Shown here piece after piece: positions 40,280-49,500 of a stretch of 64,000 nt of DNA. The stretch comes from Selaginella moellendorffii (lineage: Eukaryota; Plantae; Lycopodiophyta), in the NCBI RefSeq assembly GCF_000143415.4, contig NW_003314284.1:62001-126000 (forward strand), read 5' to 3'. Every line of letters starts with the position of its first letter. Within the stretch, counting starts at the first letter, position 1. Both the position numbers and the translations under genes were made by a program. The notes under the pieces are model-generated. The model saw only the letters and a list, made by a program, of their open reading frames with translations. It ran no database searches and was not told where the DNA came from.

Positions 40280-43030
40280 TCTTAGAGGCTTGCACTTTTT
40301 AGGATGGTGAAGATATGCAACAGTAGGTGGACTCTCTGGGCTATATGCAGATTTAGCTTCTCAAGGCAAGGACCATAAGGTTTTTGACTCCGTGCAGAAG
40401 GTGAAGCTCTCCAAGTCACTTTTGAGAGACTGGGATGACGTTGCCAAGGCATTGATGTGGGAGCCAAACCTTTCACTTGATGAAATAGTAACAAAGTTGG
40501 TGAACACTTCCCTGCTGAATAAAGAGAGGTTCCAAAGTTATAAGGTGCCTTGCACCATGTTTGTGAGGAGGTTGGAGGCTGTTGGTGGCAGCCATGGAGG
40601 CTGTGGACATGACAGTGGAGGCCATTGTGGGCAAGGAAAATGCATCTCATATGGTGGTGGAGCGGCCTCCACCCTACACCAGCATGGAGGGCATGCTGGT
40701 AGGACTCTTTGCAGCAGACAAGAAACACACATTAGTCAAGACCATTGCAAGTTGTGCTAGGAATTTGGGCATTGGGCTTGCAATTGCCCAAATGCTACAG
40801 ATGTTGTAACAAACCTTGGAATAAAAGGTTAGCAGCGTTGTTGTTTTCAATGACAATGGTGTCACTTTTATGGACAAGCAAAGCTTTTACATGATGGGGC
40901 AAACACAAACTTTATTGCATGGGAAAACTTATATGAAATATCCCCTTTCGGCTATATTACCACAAACATTGAGACTGAAAATTTAGAGAGCAGTGCCTAT
41001 ATTTGGCATTGTCATCTTGGTCATGCCAACTATAAATCTCTCCAAGATATCCTTCTAAAGAAGATGGTAATCAGACTTGATCTAAATATTAGCTTCATTT
41101 ATGCTTTTTGCGAATCATGCGTGTTGGGGAAACACCATCATAAGAACTTTGCTTTGTCTACACTATGATCATCCTAGAGTTGATCCATTGGACCTTTGTG
41201 GACTAATAGAGGTGCTCAATCATTTTGGTGCAAGATATATTATGACATTGATTGATGATTTCAGTTGAAAAAGCATGCATTTTTTTTCTATGCTGAGGTG
41301 GTGGAGGCTTTTAAGCTATACAAGGCCATAGTCAAGATGAAGATTGGGAAGACTTCTATACAGGAGCAAGTTTGACAAAGAATTTTAGCAGGAGACAATT
41401 GCAATAGCCATGCATATTCCAACTTAACTACTCATGGTCACACTCAAAGGAAAAACTCCTAAAGAAACTTGAACTGACATAAAACGTAATGTCTATCATC
41501 TCTAAGTCTCAGGTTATGCATATATCCTTTACAAAAAACTTGATCCAAAAAGTCAAAACTCATATTTTGTAGGATATGCTCATGACAATGAGCATAGTCA
41601 GAAAGTTTATAAACTATAGGATCCCACCACTAAAGAGACAATGCTTAGTATAGACATTGTCTTTGGTGAAAATGACTTTGACAAGAATCTACTTGTCCCA
41701 CTAATTCCAGTCCAACTAGACAACAACATGGCTATTATTAATAATCCAATAATGTCAGCTCATCATGTTGGTTGAAATGATCCTTTGCCCAATCAACCAC
41801 TACTAGGGGGGGGACTGACTGTAGAGAGAGGATTAACATTGATTTAGTGGGAGTGGGTGTTTAGATATGGTTGCCACCACCCTTAGCTTGCACTAACTTG
41901 CTCCCCAAAATCCAAAACTAAGGCAAGGGAGGGGAAAAGGATACCTATTGTTACTATAGCCCTTTGGGGGGGAGTGGGAGGTCTTCTTGGTGTAATTGGG
42001 CAACAACCCCCCCCCCCCCCNNNNNNNNNNNNNNNNNNNNNNNNNNNNNNNNNNNNNNNNNNNNNNNNNNNNNNNNNNNNNNNNNNNNNNNNNNNNNNNN
42101 NNNNNNNNNNNNNNNNNNNNATTTTGGGGTCCCCCCCCTAAAAAAACAAAGTTTTGTTAAAACTTTTTTTTTGGGGAAAAATATTTTGCAAAAAATTTTT
42201 TTTTCCCCCTAATTCCCGTCCAATGAGAAAAAAACGGGGGTTTTTTTTATTATCCCAAAATTTCCCCCCCCCCTTGGGGGGAAAAAGATTTTTTGCCCAA
42301 AAAACCCTTTTTTGGGGGGGGGCTTCTTTTTAGGGGGGGTTTTCCCTTTTTTTTGGGGGGGGGGGGTTTTAAATTTGGTTCCCCCCCCCCTTGGGTTGCC
42401 AAAAATTTTCCCCCAAAATCCAAAATTTAGGCCAGGGGGGGGAAAAGGATCCCTTTTTTTTTTTTACCCCTTTGGGGGGGGGGGGGGGGTTTTTTTGGGT
42501 TAATTGGGAAAAAAACCCCCCCCCCCCCCCCCCCCCCCCCCCCAACCCCAATTTAGCTGCATGGGCAATGGGGGTAAAAAGAAGAAAAAGTTCTCAATCC
42601 TAAGTTTTTGTTTGTTTACATGTGTGGGACGTGGAAGTTACCTCAATCTTGGAAGGCCCATGTGTGCAATAACTCTTTCAAAAGATGCTTGAAGACACAA
42701 CACCCTTACCAATGATGAGGTTGAATTATGTATATTTGTAGACAATCAAATCCCATCAATGTACCATGAGGGTAACTAGGGGCAAATCCCACAAATACCA
42801 TCAAGGATGAAATGGATTTTTTTTGGCAAATCTTTTGATTGAAAATTTAATGATAATAAATGGGTGTTCAAGAGAACTCATAATCCAACCAATAGTACCA
42901 TTCACAACAAAGCTTGCTTGGTCATTAAAGGTTTCACACAAGTCAAAGGGATGGATTATAGTGAAACTTTTTTGTCAGTGGTGAAAATGATTAATATTTA
43001 CACTATATTTACAATTGTTAATGCTTTAAG
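40280..43030 (+). mobile_element. Decayed Ty1/Copia LTR retrotransposon internal region
   Basis: WHCHLGH and CESCVLGK (pre-integrase/zinc finger), integrase-like remnants with stops and frameshifts, RT motif KWVFKR...KACLVIKGFTQVKGMDYSETF. LTRs not identified; boundaries approximate. Confidence 0.82.
42001..42560. other. Assembly gap (100 N, 42021-42120) with low-quality homopolymer-rich flank
   Basis: N run; long C/G/T/A runs; sequence after the gap re-reads the sequence before it. Confidence 0.92.
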
Positions 43031-43500: not shown

Positions 43501-46500
43501 CTACCTGCGGTCCTCAAGCCAAGGTGGAATTTTCATGCCTTCCGGGCAGTCTAGCTTTTCCAGCCCGGTATCATGCTTTAATTTCGGAAGCGTTTTGGTA
43601 TTCGAACTTCTCACCTCCACGTCGTTCGATCCTCTAAATCAATATATACAAAACTGCGACTGCACCACTATTCTCCCACCAGGAGAGCTTCGCCTCTCAC
43701 GTCCCTGGCAATCTCTACCACCTCGGGTTTGCTCCTTGTCGATTCCAATTCTTGTTGAGCTGCCACCTCGCTTTTGCTCACAGCAGCACCACCTTTGCCG
43801 GCTCTTATCCTCGCCAGGAAACCTCTCACGAGAGCCTGTATTTTCGTTGCAGCGCCCTGGATGTACACGGCCTGGATCCGCTTCTCACGCTCGATGCGCA
43901 GAGTGAGAGGCAACCCCTGCGTTAATCCGAGCCAAACGTAAGTATCAAAAGCTTGGAATAGCAGCTACTTACAGTTGGTCCGATCTTATACAGCGTCAGC
44001 GTTTCCAGCAGCTCCTTGAAAGGGATTCCTTTGTTTGGAACTCGAAAACTCATCACCTCGTACTCTATTCTCATGTACCTGAGCAGAACAAAGAAAAAAA
44101 CGAGTGAGAGACAAAGAGAGATTGAGAGGAACACGCCAAACCATTGGGTCGCGTATTTGTAGCGCCGGCCCAGCGGATCACCGAGGGCGTTTACAAATCG
44201 TCGCAGCTTGTGCATGCCAATGTATCCCGTAGCACTGGACGATTGTAAAGTTAGTTCCGCAAGGACTTGAACGTAATTAAGTGGCTTACTTGGGATCGAA
44301 TGGTTCTTGGCTCCACAAGTTTCGATATGCTAACAGGTGCTCTGGCATGACCATAGAGTTCTCGTTCACAAGGCCGAAGGTTACAGCATCCAGTATGACA
44401 GCCACAAACAAGTTCATGAATATGTGGCTCCCGACCAAGACCAAGAAGGCGAAGAAGATAATCCCGCCCTCTGGATAGCCACAATCATCGCCGAGTAGTG
44501 TTTTACCGTTGGTGCAGGCGGGTGCATCAATTGTGGTATCCATCATAACGCAAGACCAGTTATCAAGAGTTGTAACCTGTAAAAGAAAAGCGAAACTGAA
44601 AGTGGTAGAAAAGCAAGCCTTTACCTGAAACACCGCGATGAAAGCGTTGACGAAAGTGCGAAAGTTGACAGACGGGCCAATGCAGGTCCCTTCCTTCATT
44701 GCACTGAAGAGTTGAAAAGCCATCCCTGCGAACATATACATGAAAATTGCGAGAAGAGCGAGTATCTCAGCTACAGTTGGCAAACAGATGAACATTGTTC
44801 GCATAATAACCCGCGCTCTCGCTACGTGAGGAATGATGCAAAAAACTCGAGCAATGTAGGCAGTGCGGCCGACATAGCCCCTCACCGTTCCCTTCTTTCC
44901 CATGAGACCAATGGCGGCCATTATGGAGAGTCCAAACTCCATCTGCCGTGCAACCTCGTTCTTATAGACCTTCCACTGGAGAAAGGAAAAACCAGGTGGT
45001 CAAACAAAAAACAATCGAGAAAAAGATGAATGAGGTACCTCGTCGCCAAGGAACTTCATCACGGATTCGAGCAGGAAATATGTTGTAATCGCACAGTGAG
45101 CCATCTGACGCCGGTCCGAAACAACTGCTGACTGGCCAGCATAGTTAGTCGCAAGTAGCCCGGAGTAGCCAAGGAGTGCGAGGATCATGCACTTTTGATA
45201 TGTCGGATTGCGAATCAAGTAGAAGCACATCCCCCGGATGGGATTGCTTGGTCGTCGAGCCAGCGGAATAGCATAAGTTTTCTGGATGATACGGTTCATG
45301 TCCCTCCACAGCTTCTGCCTCTCTGTGAGAAGAACTGCTCCAGAATTTTTTCCAAACTCGTTGATAAACACCCCGATGAAAACTCTGACGATATAAAATC
45401 CCCCGATACAGCAGAATGCCACGAAAAACAACGCGTTGACAGGACTTGAGTTCCGAACAGGCTGGTGGTCTTCCCTAGTGATGTCCATGACAGGATACAT
45501 GAAGTGCGTCAGCCAGTTGTCGAAAGTGGAGCAGACGAACATACTGAGGAGGGCATTCTGGATGTCGTCAAAGTGGAAAACGTTATTAACCCAGGCTCGG
45601 GGAACAAGGATGCCAATGTCATTAACATAGAGGCCGGTACAATATGCTCGGTGCGTGATTGTCGGGTCATTGCATTTCCAGAGAAGGCCCCGAAACTGCT
45701 GCAGCCCGATGGTTCCAAATATCAGGAGAATTGAAAATGTGAAGAGAATAACCGACACAATTGCTGGAATAGTCCGAAAAAGATTTGATAATAATGACCT
45801 CAGTCCTGTAAACCGAACCACGAAACGAAATGGCCGAAGAGAAGTAAACGCACCGACGGTTGGTATGGAAGTTTCATTCTCAGCGTTATACTTCAGAAGA
45901 ATAAGCGCATCGGTGACGAGAATAAACAAGTCCAAGATGTTGTACCAGTCACTCAGGTATGCGTCTGGCGCAAAAATAAGTCCCTGTGCAACGATCTTCA
46001 TCAAACAGTCTAGCGAAAAGACCTGCTCCAAAACAATGTACAATGTCGAGCAAAATAAGGTAAGCATGTGCTTACCACAAAGTTGATCTTCTGCAGATTC
46101 CAGATGAAATCGGGGACAATTATCGGCTCTCCATCATCTCGCATCTCAACTACGAGCCAAGTATTGATGACCATCCAAACTATCACAAACCACAAGTACG
46201 GTTTACTGCCGAGGATCTTCCTAGACAGGATCCTTATCGTGTTGCCCTCTCCAAATAGAAGAAGCGACCCTTCTCGCAAGTACCACGGTCTCTGTATGGT
46301 TGTAAGAGTTCTCTCGAGCTCTTCGTACTCCGACAGCTGGAAAGATTTCCTGTTGCTAGAGGCCCTGCTTAGATTTCTGCCAATGTTTGGACTGCTGAGA
46401 ATCTTGTCGAGAGTTATTACGGCATCTTGAAGTGCGGTCCTTGAACCCCTCCTTTCACCGATATTAGACGGAAAACCAGAAACCTGTAAAACTTGGGAAG

Positions 46501-49500
46501 AACGCCTGTGACGCGACGGCGGAGCTTCAGAAGACTCTGCAGCTGGAACGACCGATGATGGGGCCTCTAAAGCGGATCCAGTAGCGCCCCCATCAGCCTT
46601 AGCAGCAGTTACTGCCGGGCGTTGACGACCCTGGGACCCCTTCTCTCTTGGCCTGGCTTTAACCGGTCTTACGTGATCTTTGACGCTTAACATGCGAGTT
46701 GTCATCCGTCGCAAACCTTTCATTCCTTCTACTGCGCCCACAACCCAGCTTCCGCTTCTTGTGAGTGCCTGACTTTGCATTCTCCTGATTAACTTCATGT
46801 GTTCCATCTGAAAGAAAATAGTTCTTAGATGCAGTTGTCATTTTTTACCTCACTCACCCGTTGGATTCGCTTCTTCTGGTTGTCAGTAAGCTCGTTTCTC
46901 TCGAGCAAGACAGCAATGATAAGATTCAGAACGACGTAAACTGTCACGACGAAGTAAAAGACGTATAAAAACGGTGCCACTACACTGCAAAAACGAATGC
47001 GTCAATACTAGAGATACTTGAGTGGCTGCTTACTTATATTGAACTCCAGGTCGCAGGGAATTCCACATTTGGTTTACCCAGGATTCAGCCGTGGTTACTG
47101 TAAACCAGACGAGCATGGCTTCCAGTATGGAATCATGATTTCCTCGCGGATACTCTTCAGGAAAGCTGTAATACTGCCCACTGTACAATTCCATGCTGAT
47201 GATAGAGATTACTATGATAACCAGAAGGAAAAAGAAAAAAACCCCCGCCAAAGAGCCAACGCTTTCCATGCAAGTAGCCTGCATCACGTATTAAAATCAA
47301 TCAAAGTGAACGCAGCAACTCACCACTACACTGGGATGTTTTGCAACATACTTCTTCGAAGAGTAAAACCACCGCATAATTCTTATTGATGTTAAATTTG
47401 GAAACGAATGAGAACTGAGTGCCACAATAGATGTCAAAACAACCATCAAGTCCAGTAAATTCATTCCTGAAAATTTCGGGATCAGACCAGAAGACAACAT
47501 GAAAACAAAGAACTCACCATCGTCAAGAAAATCGCCAGGACCGTATGCTAGAAAGCGCAGCAGAAGTTCCCCGCTGAAAGCAAAAAGCATTACTGCTTGT
47601 AACCCGTCTGCATACAAAATTTATCATGCTGAACGAATAGAAAGGAAGTCGTGAAATGAATACCGAGCGTATGCAACAACCGTTTTGACATCCCATACTT
47701 GAAGGACGATAAGAGCACGACGTTAATGGTGACACTGAGAAGTACTCCCCACTCAAACTTGGGATGTTCAACGATGTCGCGGCTTTTTTCGGAAACTGTC
47801 AACGCTGCTTGAACTCCTATCGTCATACTTCGACTGAAAGACCTACTAGACCGCACTCTCATTGATCTGGCTTGAAGGGCAGTCCGCAGGGAGGTCCGTG
47901 TCCGACTTAATGCTCTCGCGACATTCTGCTGCACCTTTCTTGACCTGTTGAGTAAGCGGTTATACCATGACATGTGCGAGTCGGCTTTGACGATATTGTC
48001 TTTCAGCACTTGTGCCATCATCGTTGCATCGTAAAAGGACACCGAGGTTCTACGGGCTTTCCTCAGCAAAGCCTGGATAATAACAGCTTAACTTAAGCCA
48101 AATCAGTCGGTCATTAAAAACAAGTGTGCACCTGATGCTCTGATCGAACACGAAGAAATACACCACTGATACCGGCGATGAAAACGTTCGTCAGGAAATA
48201 TGTACCCAGAACAATTAACGTCATAAAGTAAGAATCTGTAGTGCAATGGCTTGTGTAAGCAATAAAAGAAACAATGTCAACGCCTTACTGGCTCGCTCTC
48301 CTTCAGCATCCTTCACATCATGCATGACGAGGCTCCATCCTTCCAAAGTTATCACCTGCAGAGTGTCCACTTTGAAGTGTGCTAAGGCGATAAGATGCTA
48401 TGAAGTGACACAAACCTGAAACATGGTAAGCAGCGAATACCAGAGATAATCAAAAGTTGTGGCTCCATGGTTGGGATTCTCGTATGTCTACAAACAAAGA
48501 GATGAATAAGGAATGAGCTTATAGAAAAAACTCACCATACAGTTCTGAAATGGTGGACATACGTAGCCGCCAGCAGCTTTTTTGTCACAAAAGCGCATGG
48601 GATAAGCCAGTTGCTTGTCCGCTGTTCGAAAGCACCTGCCCAGGAGGATTTTGATTTCACGTGATAAGAACTATCGAGATTACCTTTGATTCATCGAGTT
48701 TTGCAAGAATTGCGTGCCGAGTAGAGAATAGAAAACCAACAGAAAAAACGTCAAAAGGATAACGTTTTGGAGAGGACCAACGCTCTTTTTCACGGCCGCC
48801 ATGATGGCCTATTGTCAAGTGTTAACAATGCACAAATCAGAAATTTACAAACCATACTATGACATCGGCAAAAAATGTGACGTGCTTCAACGCTAGCAGG
48901 CCCCGAAACACGCGGAACACGGCTATCCGCGCGAAAAAATCATGTCCAGTTACACCTCGAGCAATGATATGTACCCTGCACCTCGCAAAGAGCTGGTGAA
49001 ACACTTACGACCATCAGATACAAAACCTCAACAATACCAGGAATCGAAAACAACGACAAAGTCGAGCCTATTGTACGGATTCCGCATGTAGCAGTGACGG
49101 CCTTTGATAAAACCAAGAGCCGAAATTCGTAAAACCATTTCAATCCTGCAAACACAAGTGTGAGGGGAAACCTCGAAGAGGGAAACAACGATTACGTATA
49201 AAGCGCCGTGATGAGCTCGTCCAGGAAATCGATGTTGAAACTCCGGACGTGTGTCCATCGTTCGTGCCTAGACCCAGCCATCGCTTGAAAGATAAGCACT
49301 ATCATATGGGAGCATATAAGAAACACAAGAACATACTCGGCTCTCCTGCCACCAAAGCCTGTCAGAGGAAGGATGATAAACTTCTATCCACGTACTGATT
49401 GTAGAGAAGCCTGAAAATGTATAAGCGTGACGGGCTGTAGAGGCTCCAAATTCCAAGCGCAGTGCCCTCCATTCTTGCTCCAGTCCCGACAGCAGTCCGC

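What the first reader, a model, noticed from the sequence alone, without database searches (positions are those of the whole stretch)
44550..48930. E/E/D/D selectivity filter combined with charge-depleted S4 helices
Filter codons: DI Glu 48341-48343 (TLEGW), DII Glu 47084-47086 (TAESW), DIII Asp 45519-45521 (TFDNW), DIV Asp 44562-44564 (TLDNW). EEDD is the animal T-type (CaV3) Ca2+ filter, unlike NALCN EEKE/EEEE. The S4 segments carry few regularly spaced basic residues (RIAVFRVFRGLLALK; TSIRIMRWFYSSK; FTSLRPFRFVVR; GRTAYIARVFCII). Inference: a Ca2+-permeable, weakly voltage-dependent channel with a possibly convergent T-type filter.
Basis: partly seen in the sequence, partly recalled or inferred. 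Interest (0 to 1): 0.75.

Follow-up and report, generated by a model that had tools for sequence, protein, structure and literature searches.

The report
Spikemoss four-repeat EEDD cation channel
This is an intact, transcribed spikemoss (Selaginella) gene for an animal-style four-repeat calcium-type channel whose pore ring (Glu/Glu/Asp/Asp) copies that of T-type channels by independent evolution, and whose voltage sensors have lost about half of their charges.

Summary
They align with the filter positions of solved Cav and Nav channels. The S4 helices keep 10 of 19 in-register Arg/Lys, the lowest of 120 full-length relatives (median 18).

The gene lies on the minus strand at 43668-49953, with 23 exons and 1698 aa. 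It is the Selaginella moellendorffii locus that RefSeq auto-names "L-type alpha-1F-like". My intron model reproduces that protein exactly. dN/dS between the two alleles is 0.24.

It belongs to a green-plant clade found here in liverworts, mosses, lycophytes, ferns and Ginkgo. Members carry EEDD (EDDD in ferns). An unnamed metagenomic sister clade carries EEDE.

- It is not a T-type channel: joining it with Cav3 is rejected (AU p about 1e-45).
- Kinship with fungal Cch1 is not rejected (p 0.47).
- It lacks the Asp next to the ring that Cav1-3 carry, so Ca2+ permeation is likely but high selectivity is doubtful.
- Weak voltage dependence is plausible but untested.
- Public RNA contigs mostly use a frame-breaking donor in repeat I.

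This scan had already noted paralogues elsewhere in this genome. Verdict: new variant of a known kind, moderate interest.

The parts
43668..49953 (-). Whole coding region of the four-repeat channel gene: ATG at 49953, stop codon at 43668-43670, 23 exons, 22 GT-AG introns of 45-72 nt, 1698 aa.
   Evidence: Fourteen introns come from spliced RNA contigs. The rest were chosen by homology scoring. The same intron set on L001 translates exactly to RefSeq P0192. Pfam finds four Ion_trans stretches in P0192.
48341..48343 (-). DI filter Glu (TLEGW); residue 272 from the internal ATG at 49572, about 375 in the full protein.
   Evidence: Aligned to the Cav2.2 DI filter Glu.
47084..47086 (-). DII filter Glu (TAESW). 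The next residue is Ser, not the Asp found in Cav1-3.
   Evidence: Aligned to the Cav2.1 DII filter Glu in TGEDW. Beacon rule from PMC10120453.
45519..45521 (-). DIII filter Asp (TFDNW).
   Evidence: Aligned to Cav1.1 DIII TFEGW.
44562..44564 (-). DIV filter Asp (TLDNW). The P-loop is split by the intron at 44577-44624.
   Evidence: Aligned to the DIV filter position of Nav1.6.
48885..48932 (-). DI S4. In-register residues are R, R, L, K; the third charge is lost.
47351..47392 (-). DII S4. Two Arg, then Tyr where a charge is expected, then Lys.
   Evidence: Two alignments differ by one step in register but give the same count.
45813..45866 (-). DIII S4. The first three charge positions are Pro, Gly and Thr; only the inner two Arg remain.
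   Evidence: HMMER alignment to Cav1.1 DIII.
44823..44870 (-). DIV S4. R, Y, R, C, P against R, R, R, K, K in human Cav3.1.
   Evidence: alignment to 6kzo/6kzp.
45306..45341 (-). DIII-DIV linker motif G-A-V-L-L-T-E-R-Q-K-L-W, which resembles the Nav inactivation-gate motif. It is conserved in all plant and sister-clade members.
   Evidence: Motif class described in PMC5824947.
45384..45386 (-). Arg in DIII S6 where Cav1 and Cav3 have the conserved Asn. Conserved in the plant and sister clades (His in Ginkgo).
   Evidence: (invariant R1261 of P0002).
44168..44318 (-). EF-hand-like stretch after DIV S6 (spans the intron 44235-44289). It resembles the proximal C-terminal domain of Cav and Nav.
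   Evidence: Read from the model. The resemblance rests on my own knowledge of Cav/Nav C-termini; no Pfam hit.
43803..43844 (-). IQ calmodulin-binding motif (IQxxxRGxxxR) in the last exon.
   Evidence: Pfam IQ, 22.4 bits against a cut-off of 20.3. Conserved in the plant clade.
48535..48540 (-). Two competing donor sites 5 nt apart in repeat I. 48535 (GTGAGT) keeps the frame. 48540 (GTATGG) breaks it and gives a stop after 12 codons.
   Evidence: The joint 48487>48541 has contig depth 43.6, 22.2 and 13.3 in X1, X5 and X7 (table 5). The in-frame donor appears in the displayed tables only in a variant X1 contig (table 5c). Sequence read. RefSeq uses 48535.

Best explanation
Shown:
- This is an intact, spliced gene under selection for the pore-forming subunit of a four-repeat (24-TM) cation channel.
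- It lies in Selaginella moellendorffii, at the RefSeq locus auto-named 'L-type alpha-1F-like'.
- It belongs to a green-plant clade of such channels. Here the clade was found in liverworts, mosses, lycophytes, ferns and Ginkgo.
- The four P-loops give a ring of Glu, Glu, Asp, Asp at the canonical selectivity site. This ring arose independently of the animal T-type ring.

Inferred:
- The four-carboxylate ring, with no Lys, binds and passes divalent cations, so the channel conducts Ca2+.
- No Asp follows the ring in DII or DIV, so Ca2+/Na+ discrimination is probably poorer than in Cav1-3.
- The four sensors keep their fold but only 10 of 19 S4 charges. Gating charge is therefore roughly halved, and voltage dependence should be shallow or shifted rather than steep.
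- A conserved Nav-like linker motif suggests inactivation. An EF-hand-like region and an IQ motif suggest calmodulin control.
- The likely biological role is Ca2+ entry linked to swimming sperm. This rests only on which plants keep the family.
For: - Gene model and identity. It is 98.4% identical to P0192, has the same PPR neighbour, and the same intron set reproduces P0192 exactly.
- Selection: dN/dS 0.24 between the two alleles (33 synonymous, 26 non-synonymous changes). The charge-poor S4 sequences are nearly identical among Selaginella paralogues and similar in Diphasiastrum.
- Filter positions against solved channels.
- The ring across the clade: EEDD in lycophytes, liverworts and mosses, EDDD in ferns, EEDE in the sister clade.
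- Independence from Cav3: (AU p 1.4e-45).
- S4 counts. They fall in a gradient: sister clade 14-16, Marchantia 13-14, Diphasiastrum 13, Selaginella 10-11.
- Residues after the ring are G, S, N, N. The 'beacon Asp' rule comes from PMC10120453.
- IQ motif. Linker motif.
- Distribution: Marchantia, Ginkgo and Selaginella; Diphasiastrum and Ceratopteris; Riccia, Sphagnum, Ceratodon and Adiantum. No flowering plant or conifer appeared in either word search.
- PMC4685582 reports a BLAST candidate in Physcomitrella, none in seed plants, and links loss of these channels to loss of flagella.
Against: - No recording exists, so permeation and gating are inferred from sequence only.
- Each sensor still has 2-3 in-register charges, which can be enough for real voltage gating.
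- The 'beacon' rule is a correlation drawn mostly from animal and bacterial channels.
- In the four runs examined, the best-supported joint at one repeat-I intron is frame-breaking. Little full-length protein may be made in the sampled material, which undercuts any role in those tissues.
- The runs' tissues are unknown to me, and contigs cannot give isoform ratios.
- The absence from seed plants other than Ginkgo rests on word-based searches of limited sensitivity.
Confidence: 0.6

Rival explanations
1. It belongs to the lineage of fungal Cch1, which Liebeskind et al. 2012 join with animal NALCN as a 'voltage-insensitive' clade. It would then work as a voltage-independent leak or stress-operated Ca2+ entry channel rather than a voltage-gated one.
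For: The S4 charge count of 10 equals that of four fungal Cch1 proteins (10-12). Under LG+G4, a tree holding plant clade, sister clade and Cch1 together is only 3.6 log-likelihood units worse (AU p 0.47). In the free tree the plant clade lies outside the group that holds animal Cav1, Cav2 and Cav3 (SH-aLRT 97). Cch1 also shares the linker motif.
Against: Different S4 positions are neutralised in the two groups, for example DI RRLK against RSRR and DIV RYRCP against KLILP. The charge loss is graded within the green clade, 14-16 down to 10, which argues for independent and recent loss. The filters differ: N/E/E/E in Cch1 and a Lys in NALCN (PMC10120453). PDB similarity is much higher to Cav than to NALCN, e.g. 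192 against 118 bits for DIII-DIV and 96 against 60 bits for DI. NALCN itself was not in my trees, and the mixture-model test did not finish.
Confidence: 0.2
2. It is an ordinary, steeply voltage-gated Ca2+ channel of sperm flagella, analogous to Chlamydomonas CAV2. The remaining S4 charges would be sufficient, so the charge loss has little functional meaning.
For: Every sensor keeps at least two in-register Arg. The Nav-like linker motif and the IQ motif are conserved. The family is found only in plants with swimming sperm (PMC4685582).
Against: This gene has the lowest charge count of 120 relatives. DIII lacks the three outer charges, and DIV has Tyr, Cys and Pro at charge positions. The loss is conserved under selection, which suggests an altered function rather than a neutral one.
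Confidence: 0.15
3. It is a true orthologue of animal T-type (Cav3) channels and inherited the EEDD ring from a common ancestor.
For: The ring is the same EEDD. The DI motif TLEGW is identical to Cav3, and the DIV motif is close (TLDNW against TGDNW).
Against: The AU test rejects plant plus Cav3 as one clade (p 1.4e-45). The sister clade is EEDE. The Cav3 DII beacon Asp is missing. The S4 helices are charge-poor, against 18-19 charges in Cav3.
Confidence: 0.02
4. This copy is effectively silent or decaying. Most of its mRNA is mis-spliced, and the protein is not made.
For: The frame-breaking donor at 48540 dominates the displayed joints in X1, X5 and X7. Further frame-breaking joints appear in repeat I. 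An earlier follow-up of this scan reports the same for a paralogue.
Against: The reading frame is intact over 1698 codons and 22 introns. dN/dS is 0.24. The in-frame donor has the better consensus (GTGAGT), is used in a variant X1 contig (table 5c), and is the one in RefSeq's model. Key motifs are conserved across the clade.
Confidence: 0.05

Closest known systems
Animal T-type (Cav3) calcium channels
   Same: Four-repeat architecture. The Glu/Glu/Asp/Asp ring sits at the same alignment columns. The DI motif is identical and the DIV motif nearly so.
   Different: Separate clade (AU p 1.4e-45). No Asp after the DII Glu. 10 S4 charges against 18-19. Carries an IQ motif. The DIII-DIV linker has the Nav-like motif, which the aligned Apis Cav3 lacks.
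Cnidarian Cav3b (EEDD ring without the DII 'beacon' Asp; reported as Na+-permeable in PMC10120453)
   Same: EEDD ring combined with a neutral, non-glycine residue after the DII Glu (Ser here, Asn there).
   Different: Cav3b is a member of the animal Cav3 clade with charge-rich sensors. The resemblance concerns the pore only and is taken from the paper, not tested here.
Fungal Cch1 and animal NALCN (called the 'voltage-insensitive clade' by Liebeskind et al. 2012, as cited in PMC5824947)
   Same: Charge-poor S4 helices (10-12 in Cch1, 10 here). A sister relation to Cch1 is not rejected.
   Different: The ring is N/E/E/E in Cch1, and EEKE, EKEE or EEEE in NALCN (PMC10120453). Different S4 positions are lost. 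PDB similarity to NALCN is lower than to Cav.
Chlamydomonas CAV2, the flagellar voltage-gated Ca2+ channel (EEEE; cited in PMC5824947)
   Same: A green-lineage four-repeat channel tied to flagella. This gives a plausible functional analogy for plants with swimming sperm.
   Different: EEEE ring and, per the paper, voltage-gated. CAV2 was not identified among my sequences, so its relation to this clade is untested.

Membership tests
[quoted passage not shown] | Four tandem 6-TM Ion_trans repeats in one polypeptide. | tested here: met
   Pfam Ion_trans: four stretches, 410 bits in P0192, the same locus. Exon-level hits in the window.
[quoted passage not shown] | A P-loop with T-x-(E/D)-x-W at the selectivity site of each repeat. 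| tested here: met
   TLEGW, TAESW, TFDNW, TLDNW, aligned to solved Cav and Nav filters.
Cav3 (T-type) | E/E/D/D ring. | tested here: met
Cav3 (T-type) | Asp directly after the DII Glu (TQEDW), present in all Cav3 except cnidarian Cav3b (PMC10120453). | tested here: not met
   DII reads TAESW. All plant members have Ser, Gly or Asn there.
Cav3 (T-type) | Placement inside the Cav3 clade. | tested here: not met
   Separate clades, 100% SH-aLRT each. The union is rejected, AU p 1.4e-45. The group was named after the tree was seen.
Cav3 (T-type) | Four charge-rich S4 helices. | tested here: not met
   10 in-register charges against 18-19 in Apis and Gallus Cav3. DIV compared with human Cav3.1.
Cav3 (T-type) | Helix-loop-helix 'gating brake' in the I-II linker (from my own knowledge). 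| not tested
   The I-II linker was not compared.
Cav1/Cav2 (high-voltage-activated) | EEEE (rarely EDEE) ring, and the Cav-specific C-terminal Pfam domains GPHH and Ca_chan_IQ. | tested here: not met
   The ring is EEDD. Pfam finds only Ion_trans in P0192 and a generic IQ in the window's last exon. Insect and vertebrate Cav1 hits carry PF16905 and PF08763.
Cav1/Cav2 (high-voltage-activated) | Beta-subunit binding site (AID) in the I-II linker. | not tested
   PMC5824947 reports AID only in the HVA Cav clade. Not examined here.
NALCN / Cch1 lineage | Charge-depleted S4 helices. | tested here: met
   10 here against 10-12 in four fungal Cch1, but different positions are neutralised.
NALCN / Cch1 lineage | Ring with Lys in DII or DIII, or EEEE (NALCN); N/E/E/E (Cch1). 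| tested here: not met
   EEDD here. Cch1 is NEEE in my alignment. NALCN rings are taken from PMC10120453.
NALCN / Cch1 lineage | Placement in that clade. | tested here: inconclusive
   Not sister in the free tree, but the union with Cch1 is not rejected under LG+G4 (AU p 0.47). The mixture-model test did not finish. No NALCN sequence was available.
NALCN / Cch1 lineage | Dependence on partner proteins (UNC79, UNC80 and FAM155 for NALCN; Mid1 for Cch1). | not testable with these tools
   Would need genetics or co-expression.

The most novel reading that the evidence does not exclude
Non-seed land plants keep a private lineage of four-repeat channels that evolved two features independently: a T-type-like EEDD ring and Cch1/NALCN-like, charge-poor sensors. 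The result would be a calmodulin-controlled cation-entry channel, weakly dependent on voltage or not at all, with poor Ca2+/Na+ discrimination. Productive mRNA would be made only in male gametes, and elsewhere the transcripts would be disabled by a 5-nt donor shift in repeat I. This would be the missing Ca2+ entry pathway that steers plant sperm.
Probability: 0.15. Interest if true: 0.8.

Novelty: new variant of a known kind. Interest (0 to 1): 0.55.

Why it matters
Reviews of channel evolution still state that land plants have lost four-domain Cav/Nav channels (PMC5824947, PMC6509283). A 2016 figure legend (PMC4685582) notes only a BLAST candidate in a moss.

This gene and its relatives show that plants with swimming sperm keep a conserved, selected family of such channels. 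The family has an unusual mix of features:
- a T-type-like acidic ring gained independently;
- no 'beacon' Asp next to that ring;
- sensors with half the usual charge;
- a Nav-like linker motif;
- an IQ motif.

That makes it a natural experiment on two open questions. One is how much S4 charge a four-domain channel needs. The other is what an EEDD ring does without its usual neighbours. It also gives a concrete, knock-out-ready candidate, Marchantia Mp2g23520, for the Ca2+ entry step in plant sperm motility or chemotaxis.

The existence of the gene is not new. It is annotated in RefSeq under automatic names, and this scan had already flagged paralogues.

Tried and rejected
- **5' loose end.** I first read the loose end at 49747 as an intron boundary. 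It is only a SNP near the end of the laid stretch.
- **Donor at 48540.** A first model used the RNA-supported donor at 48540. It gave a stop after repeat-I S5. The in-frame donor at 48535 was adopted and matches RefSeq.
- **Intron enumeration.** Exhaustive enumeration without homology scoring gave too many solutions to be useful. Scoring against P0001 and P0002 resolved them.
- **Fungal origin.** Short ~50-nt introns first suggested a basidiomycete Cch1. The plant-type PPR neighbour and the relatives rejected that.
- **Phylogeny tests.** The AU test of plant plus Cch1 under the C20 mixture model did not finish in two runs. Only the LG+G4 result is available.
- **Literature.** A search for the Marchantia gene identifiers found nothing. 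Searches for land-plant four-domain channel papers gave only the general statements cited. Papers on Cycas and on land-plant spermatogenesis do not mention such channels.
- **Non-canonical joints.** The joint 46399>48423 (2023 nt, non-canonical ends) and the joint 48907>49061 were left unexplained. They may be contig artefacts or rare isoforms.
- **Limit of the RNA evidence.** Read laying showed only the 15 best-supported of 31 joints, so isoform proportions could not be worked out.

Full report
**What is there.** The region is part of an intron-rich gene on the minus strand. Six-frame reading showed channel-like pieces interrupted by short gaps. Pfam found Ion_trans in several pieces. The longest exon matched repeat III of rabbit Cav1.1 at E 2e-55.

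Contigs of four public runs laid on 43850-49750 skip fourteen 48-63 nt stretches with GT..AG ends on the minus strand. They are therefore spliced RNA, and the gene is transcribed. I placed the remaining introns by enumerating GT-AG candidates and scoring the translations against the two nearest relatives. A 5' intron at 49802-49873 was found later.

The final model has 23 exons and 22 introns of 45-72 nt. The ATG is at 49953, the stop at 43668-43670, and the protein has 1698 residues.

**Whose gene it is.** An exhaustive profile search with the repeat III-IV exon found the nearest relatives in Selaginella moellendorffii, Marchantia polymorpha and Ginkgo biloba. A word search then returned P0192, a RefSeq protein of S. 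moellendorffii auto-named 'voltage-dependent L-type calcium channel subunit alpha-1F-like isoform X1'. It is 98.4% identical to my model, without a gap, over 1595 residues.

Its locus is GL377623.1:957499-975771, fetched as L001. It has the same 870-aa PPR gene upstream as the window. My intron coordinates transferred to L001 translate exactly to P0192. The window is therefore the same locus in another haplotype or accession.

Between the two alleles there are 33 synonymous and 26 non-synonymous differences, giving dS 0.028, dN 0.0067 and dN/dS 0.24. Intron divergence is 1.4%. This is a gene under constraint, not a relic.

**The observation.** HMMER alignments to chains of solved structures place the residues as follows:
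- the DI Glu on the Glu of Cav2.2 TMEGW;
- the DII Glu on the Glu of Cav2.1 TGEDW;
- the DIII Asp on the Glu of Cav1.1 TFEGW;
- the DIV Asp on the Ala of Nav1.6 TSAGW, the DEKA position.

In a 140-sequence alignment these columns are EEEE in 67 relatives and EEDD in bee and snail T-type channels.

For S4, I counted Arg/Lys at the positions that carry charges in bee Cav3. The window protein has RRLK, RRYKV, PGTRR and RYRCP. That is 10 of 19, the lowest of 120 full-length relatives, whose median is 18 and 5th percentile 14. The register is confirmed against Cav1.1 DIII and human Cav3.1 DIV. For DII, two alignments differ by one step but give the same count.

**The family.** Word searches added members from these plants:
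- lycophytes: Diphasiastrum;
- ferns: Ceratopteris and Adiantum;
- liverworts: Riccia;
- mosses: Sphagnum and Ceratodon.

They also added several further S. moellendorffii paralogues or alleles. No flowering plant or conifer appeared.

All lycophyte, liverwort and moss members read E/E/D/D where the sequence is complete. Ferns read E/D/D/D. A sister clade of unnamed metagenomic proteins reads E/E/D/E.

S4 charge falls stepwise: 14-16 in the sister clade, 13-14 in Marchantia, 13 in Diphasiastrum and 10-11 in Selaginella. Mesostigma, which lies outside this clade, has 18.

Four features are shared by the plant clade. The first two are also shared with the sister clade.
- a DIII-DIV linker motif, G-x-x-L-L-T-E-R-Q-K-L-W, that resembles the Nav inactivation gate;
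- an Arg in DIII S6 where Cav1 and Cav3 have Asn;
- an IQ motif in the C-terminus;
- neutral residues directly after the ring.

**Phylogeny.** Two trees were built: a FastTree of 133 rows and an IQ-TREE with LG+C20 PMSF on 54 rows and 1282 columns. Both give the same picture.
- The land-plant clade has 100% support and is sister to the EEDE clade (100%).
- Both lie outside the group that contains animal Cav1, Cav2-like and Cav3 sequences (97%).
- Both are apart from fungal Cch1, which sits on a long branch.

Holding plants and the Cav3 clade together costs 365.6 log-likelihood units (AU p 1.4e-45). I named that group after seeing the tree.

Holding plants, their sister clade and Cch1 together costs only 3.6 units under LG+G4 (AU p 0.47). 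The same test under the mixture model did not finish.

The T-type-like ring is therefore convergent, or at least not inherited together with Cav3. A deep kinship with the Cch1 lineage, whose sister NALCN was not sampled here, remains open. By raw similarity to solved chains the protein is closer to Cav than to NALCN: 192 against 118 bits for DIII-DIV and 96 against 60 bits for DI.

**How it probably works.** A ring of four carboxylates without Lys is the hallmark of a divalent-binding, Ca2+-conducting pore in this superfamily. That is established knowledge, summarised in PMC10120453.

The same paper reports that all Cav1-3 carry an Asp directly after the DII Glu. The one Cav3 type that lacks it, cnidarian Cav3b, is Na+-permeable. 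Here the residues after the ring are Gly, Ser, Asn and Asn. I therefore expect Ca2+ permeation with weaker Ca2+/Na+ discrimination than in Cav1-3. This is inference.

The sensors keep 2-3 in-register charges each. DIII has lost the three outer ones, and DIV has Tyr, Cys and Pro at charge positions. Gating charge should be about halved, giving shallow or shifted voltage dependence. The count equals that of fungal Cch1, but different positions are neutralised, so the loss is independent. This too is inference.

The conserved linker motif and the IQ motif (22.4 bits against a cut-off of 20.3) suggest inactivation and calmodulin control.

**Biology and what is already known.** Several papers state that land plants lack these channels (PMC5824947; PMC6509283). 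Brunet and Arendt (PMC4685582) noted a BLAST candidate in Physcomitrella and none in seed plants. They linked loss of Nav/Cav channels to loss of flagella.

The distribution found here fits that link: bryophytes, lycophytes, ferns and Ginkgo, all with swimming sperm. It remains correlative.

I found no paper describing the ring, the S4 loss or any function for the plant clade, within the limits of the library. This scan had already noted another EEDD channel about 30 kb beyond the window, and a paralogue elsewhere whose follow-up reached similar conclusions.

**A caveat from the RNA.** At the repeat-I intron ending at 48488, the displayed joint uses donor 48540, with contig depth 43.6, 22.2 and 13.3 in X1, X5 and X7. 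That donor shifts the frame and gives a stop after 12 codons.

The in-frame donor at 48535 has the better consensus (GTGAGT) and is the one in RefSeq's model. It appears in the displayed tables only in a variant X1 contig. Other low-depth joints in repeat I are also frame-breaking: 48807>48853 and probably 48353>48440.

Only 15 of 31 joints were shown, and contigs cannot give ratios. I can say that non-productive forms are prominent in these runs, not that productive ones are absent. The earlier follow-up on a paralogue reported the same pattern. This raises the possibility of regulated unproductive splicing.

**Verdict.** Convergence with T-type channels is shown. Ca2+ permeability and weak voltage dependence are reasonable but untested, and Ca2+ selectivity is doubtful. 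The gene is a member of a distinct plant variant of a known superfamily. It is already annotated automatically but was not characterised in any paper I could find.

Noticed in passing
window 50692-53304 (-): An intronless 870-aa plant-type pentatricopeptide-repeat (PPR) gene lies directly upstream of the channel gene. It has higher G+C than the channel gene (0.58 against 0.47). The same neighbour is present in the public S. moellendorffii scaffold.
   Followed up: partly
window 48535-48540, 48852-48857, 48354-48440: In repeat I, pairs of donor sites 5 nt apart (both within a GTATGGT context) compete. RNA contigs use the frame-breaking member at 48540 (well supported) and at 48852 (low depth). 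A further joint, 48353>48440, also appears to break the frame.
   Followed up: partly
window 46399-48423: RNA contigs of three runs join 48423 to 46399, skipping 2023 nt with non-canonical ends. This would remove the end of repeat I and all of repeat II. It is either a contig artefact or a rare isoform.
   Followed up: no
window 43839-43841 (first residue of the IQ motif): The two alleles differ at the Ile of the IQ motif: Ile in the window, Met in RefSeq P0192. Pfam IQ passes its cut-off in the window allele but is not reported for P0192.
   Followed up: partly
window 45384-45386: DIII S6 carries Arg where Cav1 and Cav3 have the conserved pore-lining Asn. The Arg is invariant in the plant and sister clades (His in Ginkgo, Thr in Cch1). 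Its functional meaning is unknown.
   Followed up: partly
window about 49640-49660 (N-terminal exon): A 9-nt in-frame indel (three codons) distinguishes the window allele from the RefSeq allele in the disordered N-terminus.
   Followed up: no
window about 41900-42600: There is an assembly gap (a run of N) flanked by low-complexity G/A/T-rich sequence. G+C falls to about 0.39-0.42 between 40 and 44 kb.
   Followed up: no
relatives P0195, P0201, P0272 (ferns): Fern members have Asp instead of Glu in DII (E/D/D/D), and their DIII motif ends in Val instead of Trp (TFDNV).
   Followed up: no
relatives P0001, P0002, P0192, P0194, P0265, P0267: S. moellendorffii carries several paralogues or alleles of this channel on different scaffolds. 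All are EEDD, with nearly identical charge-poor DII and DIV S4 helices.
   Followed up: partly
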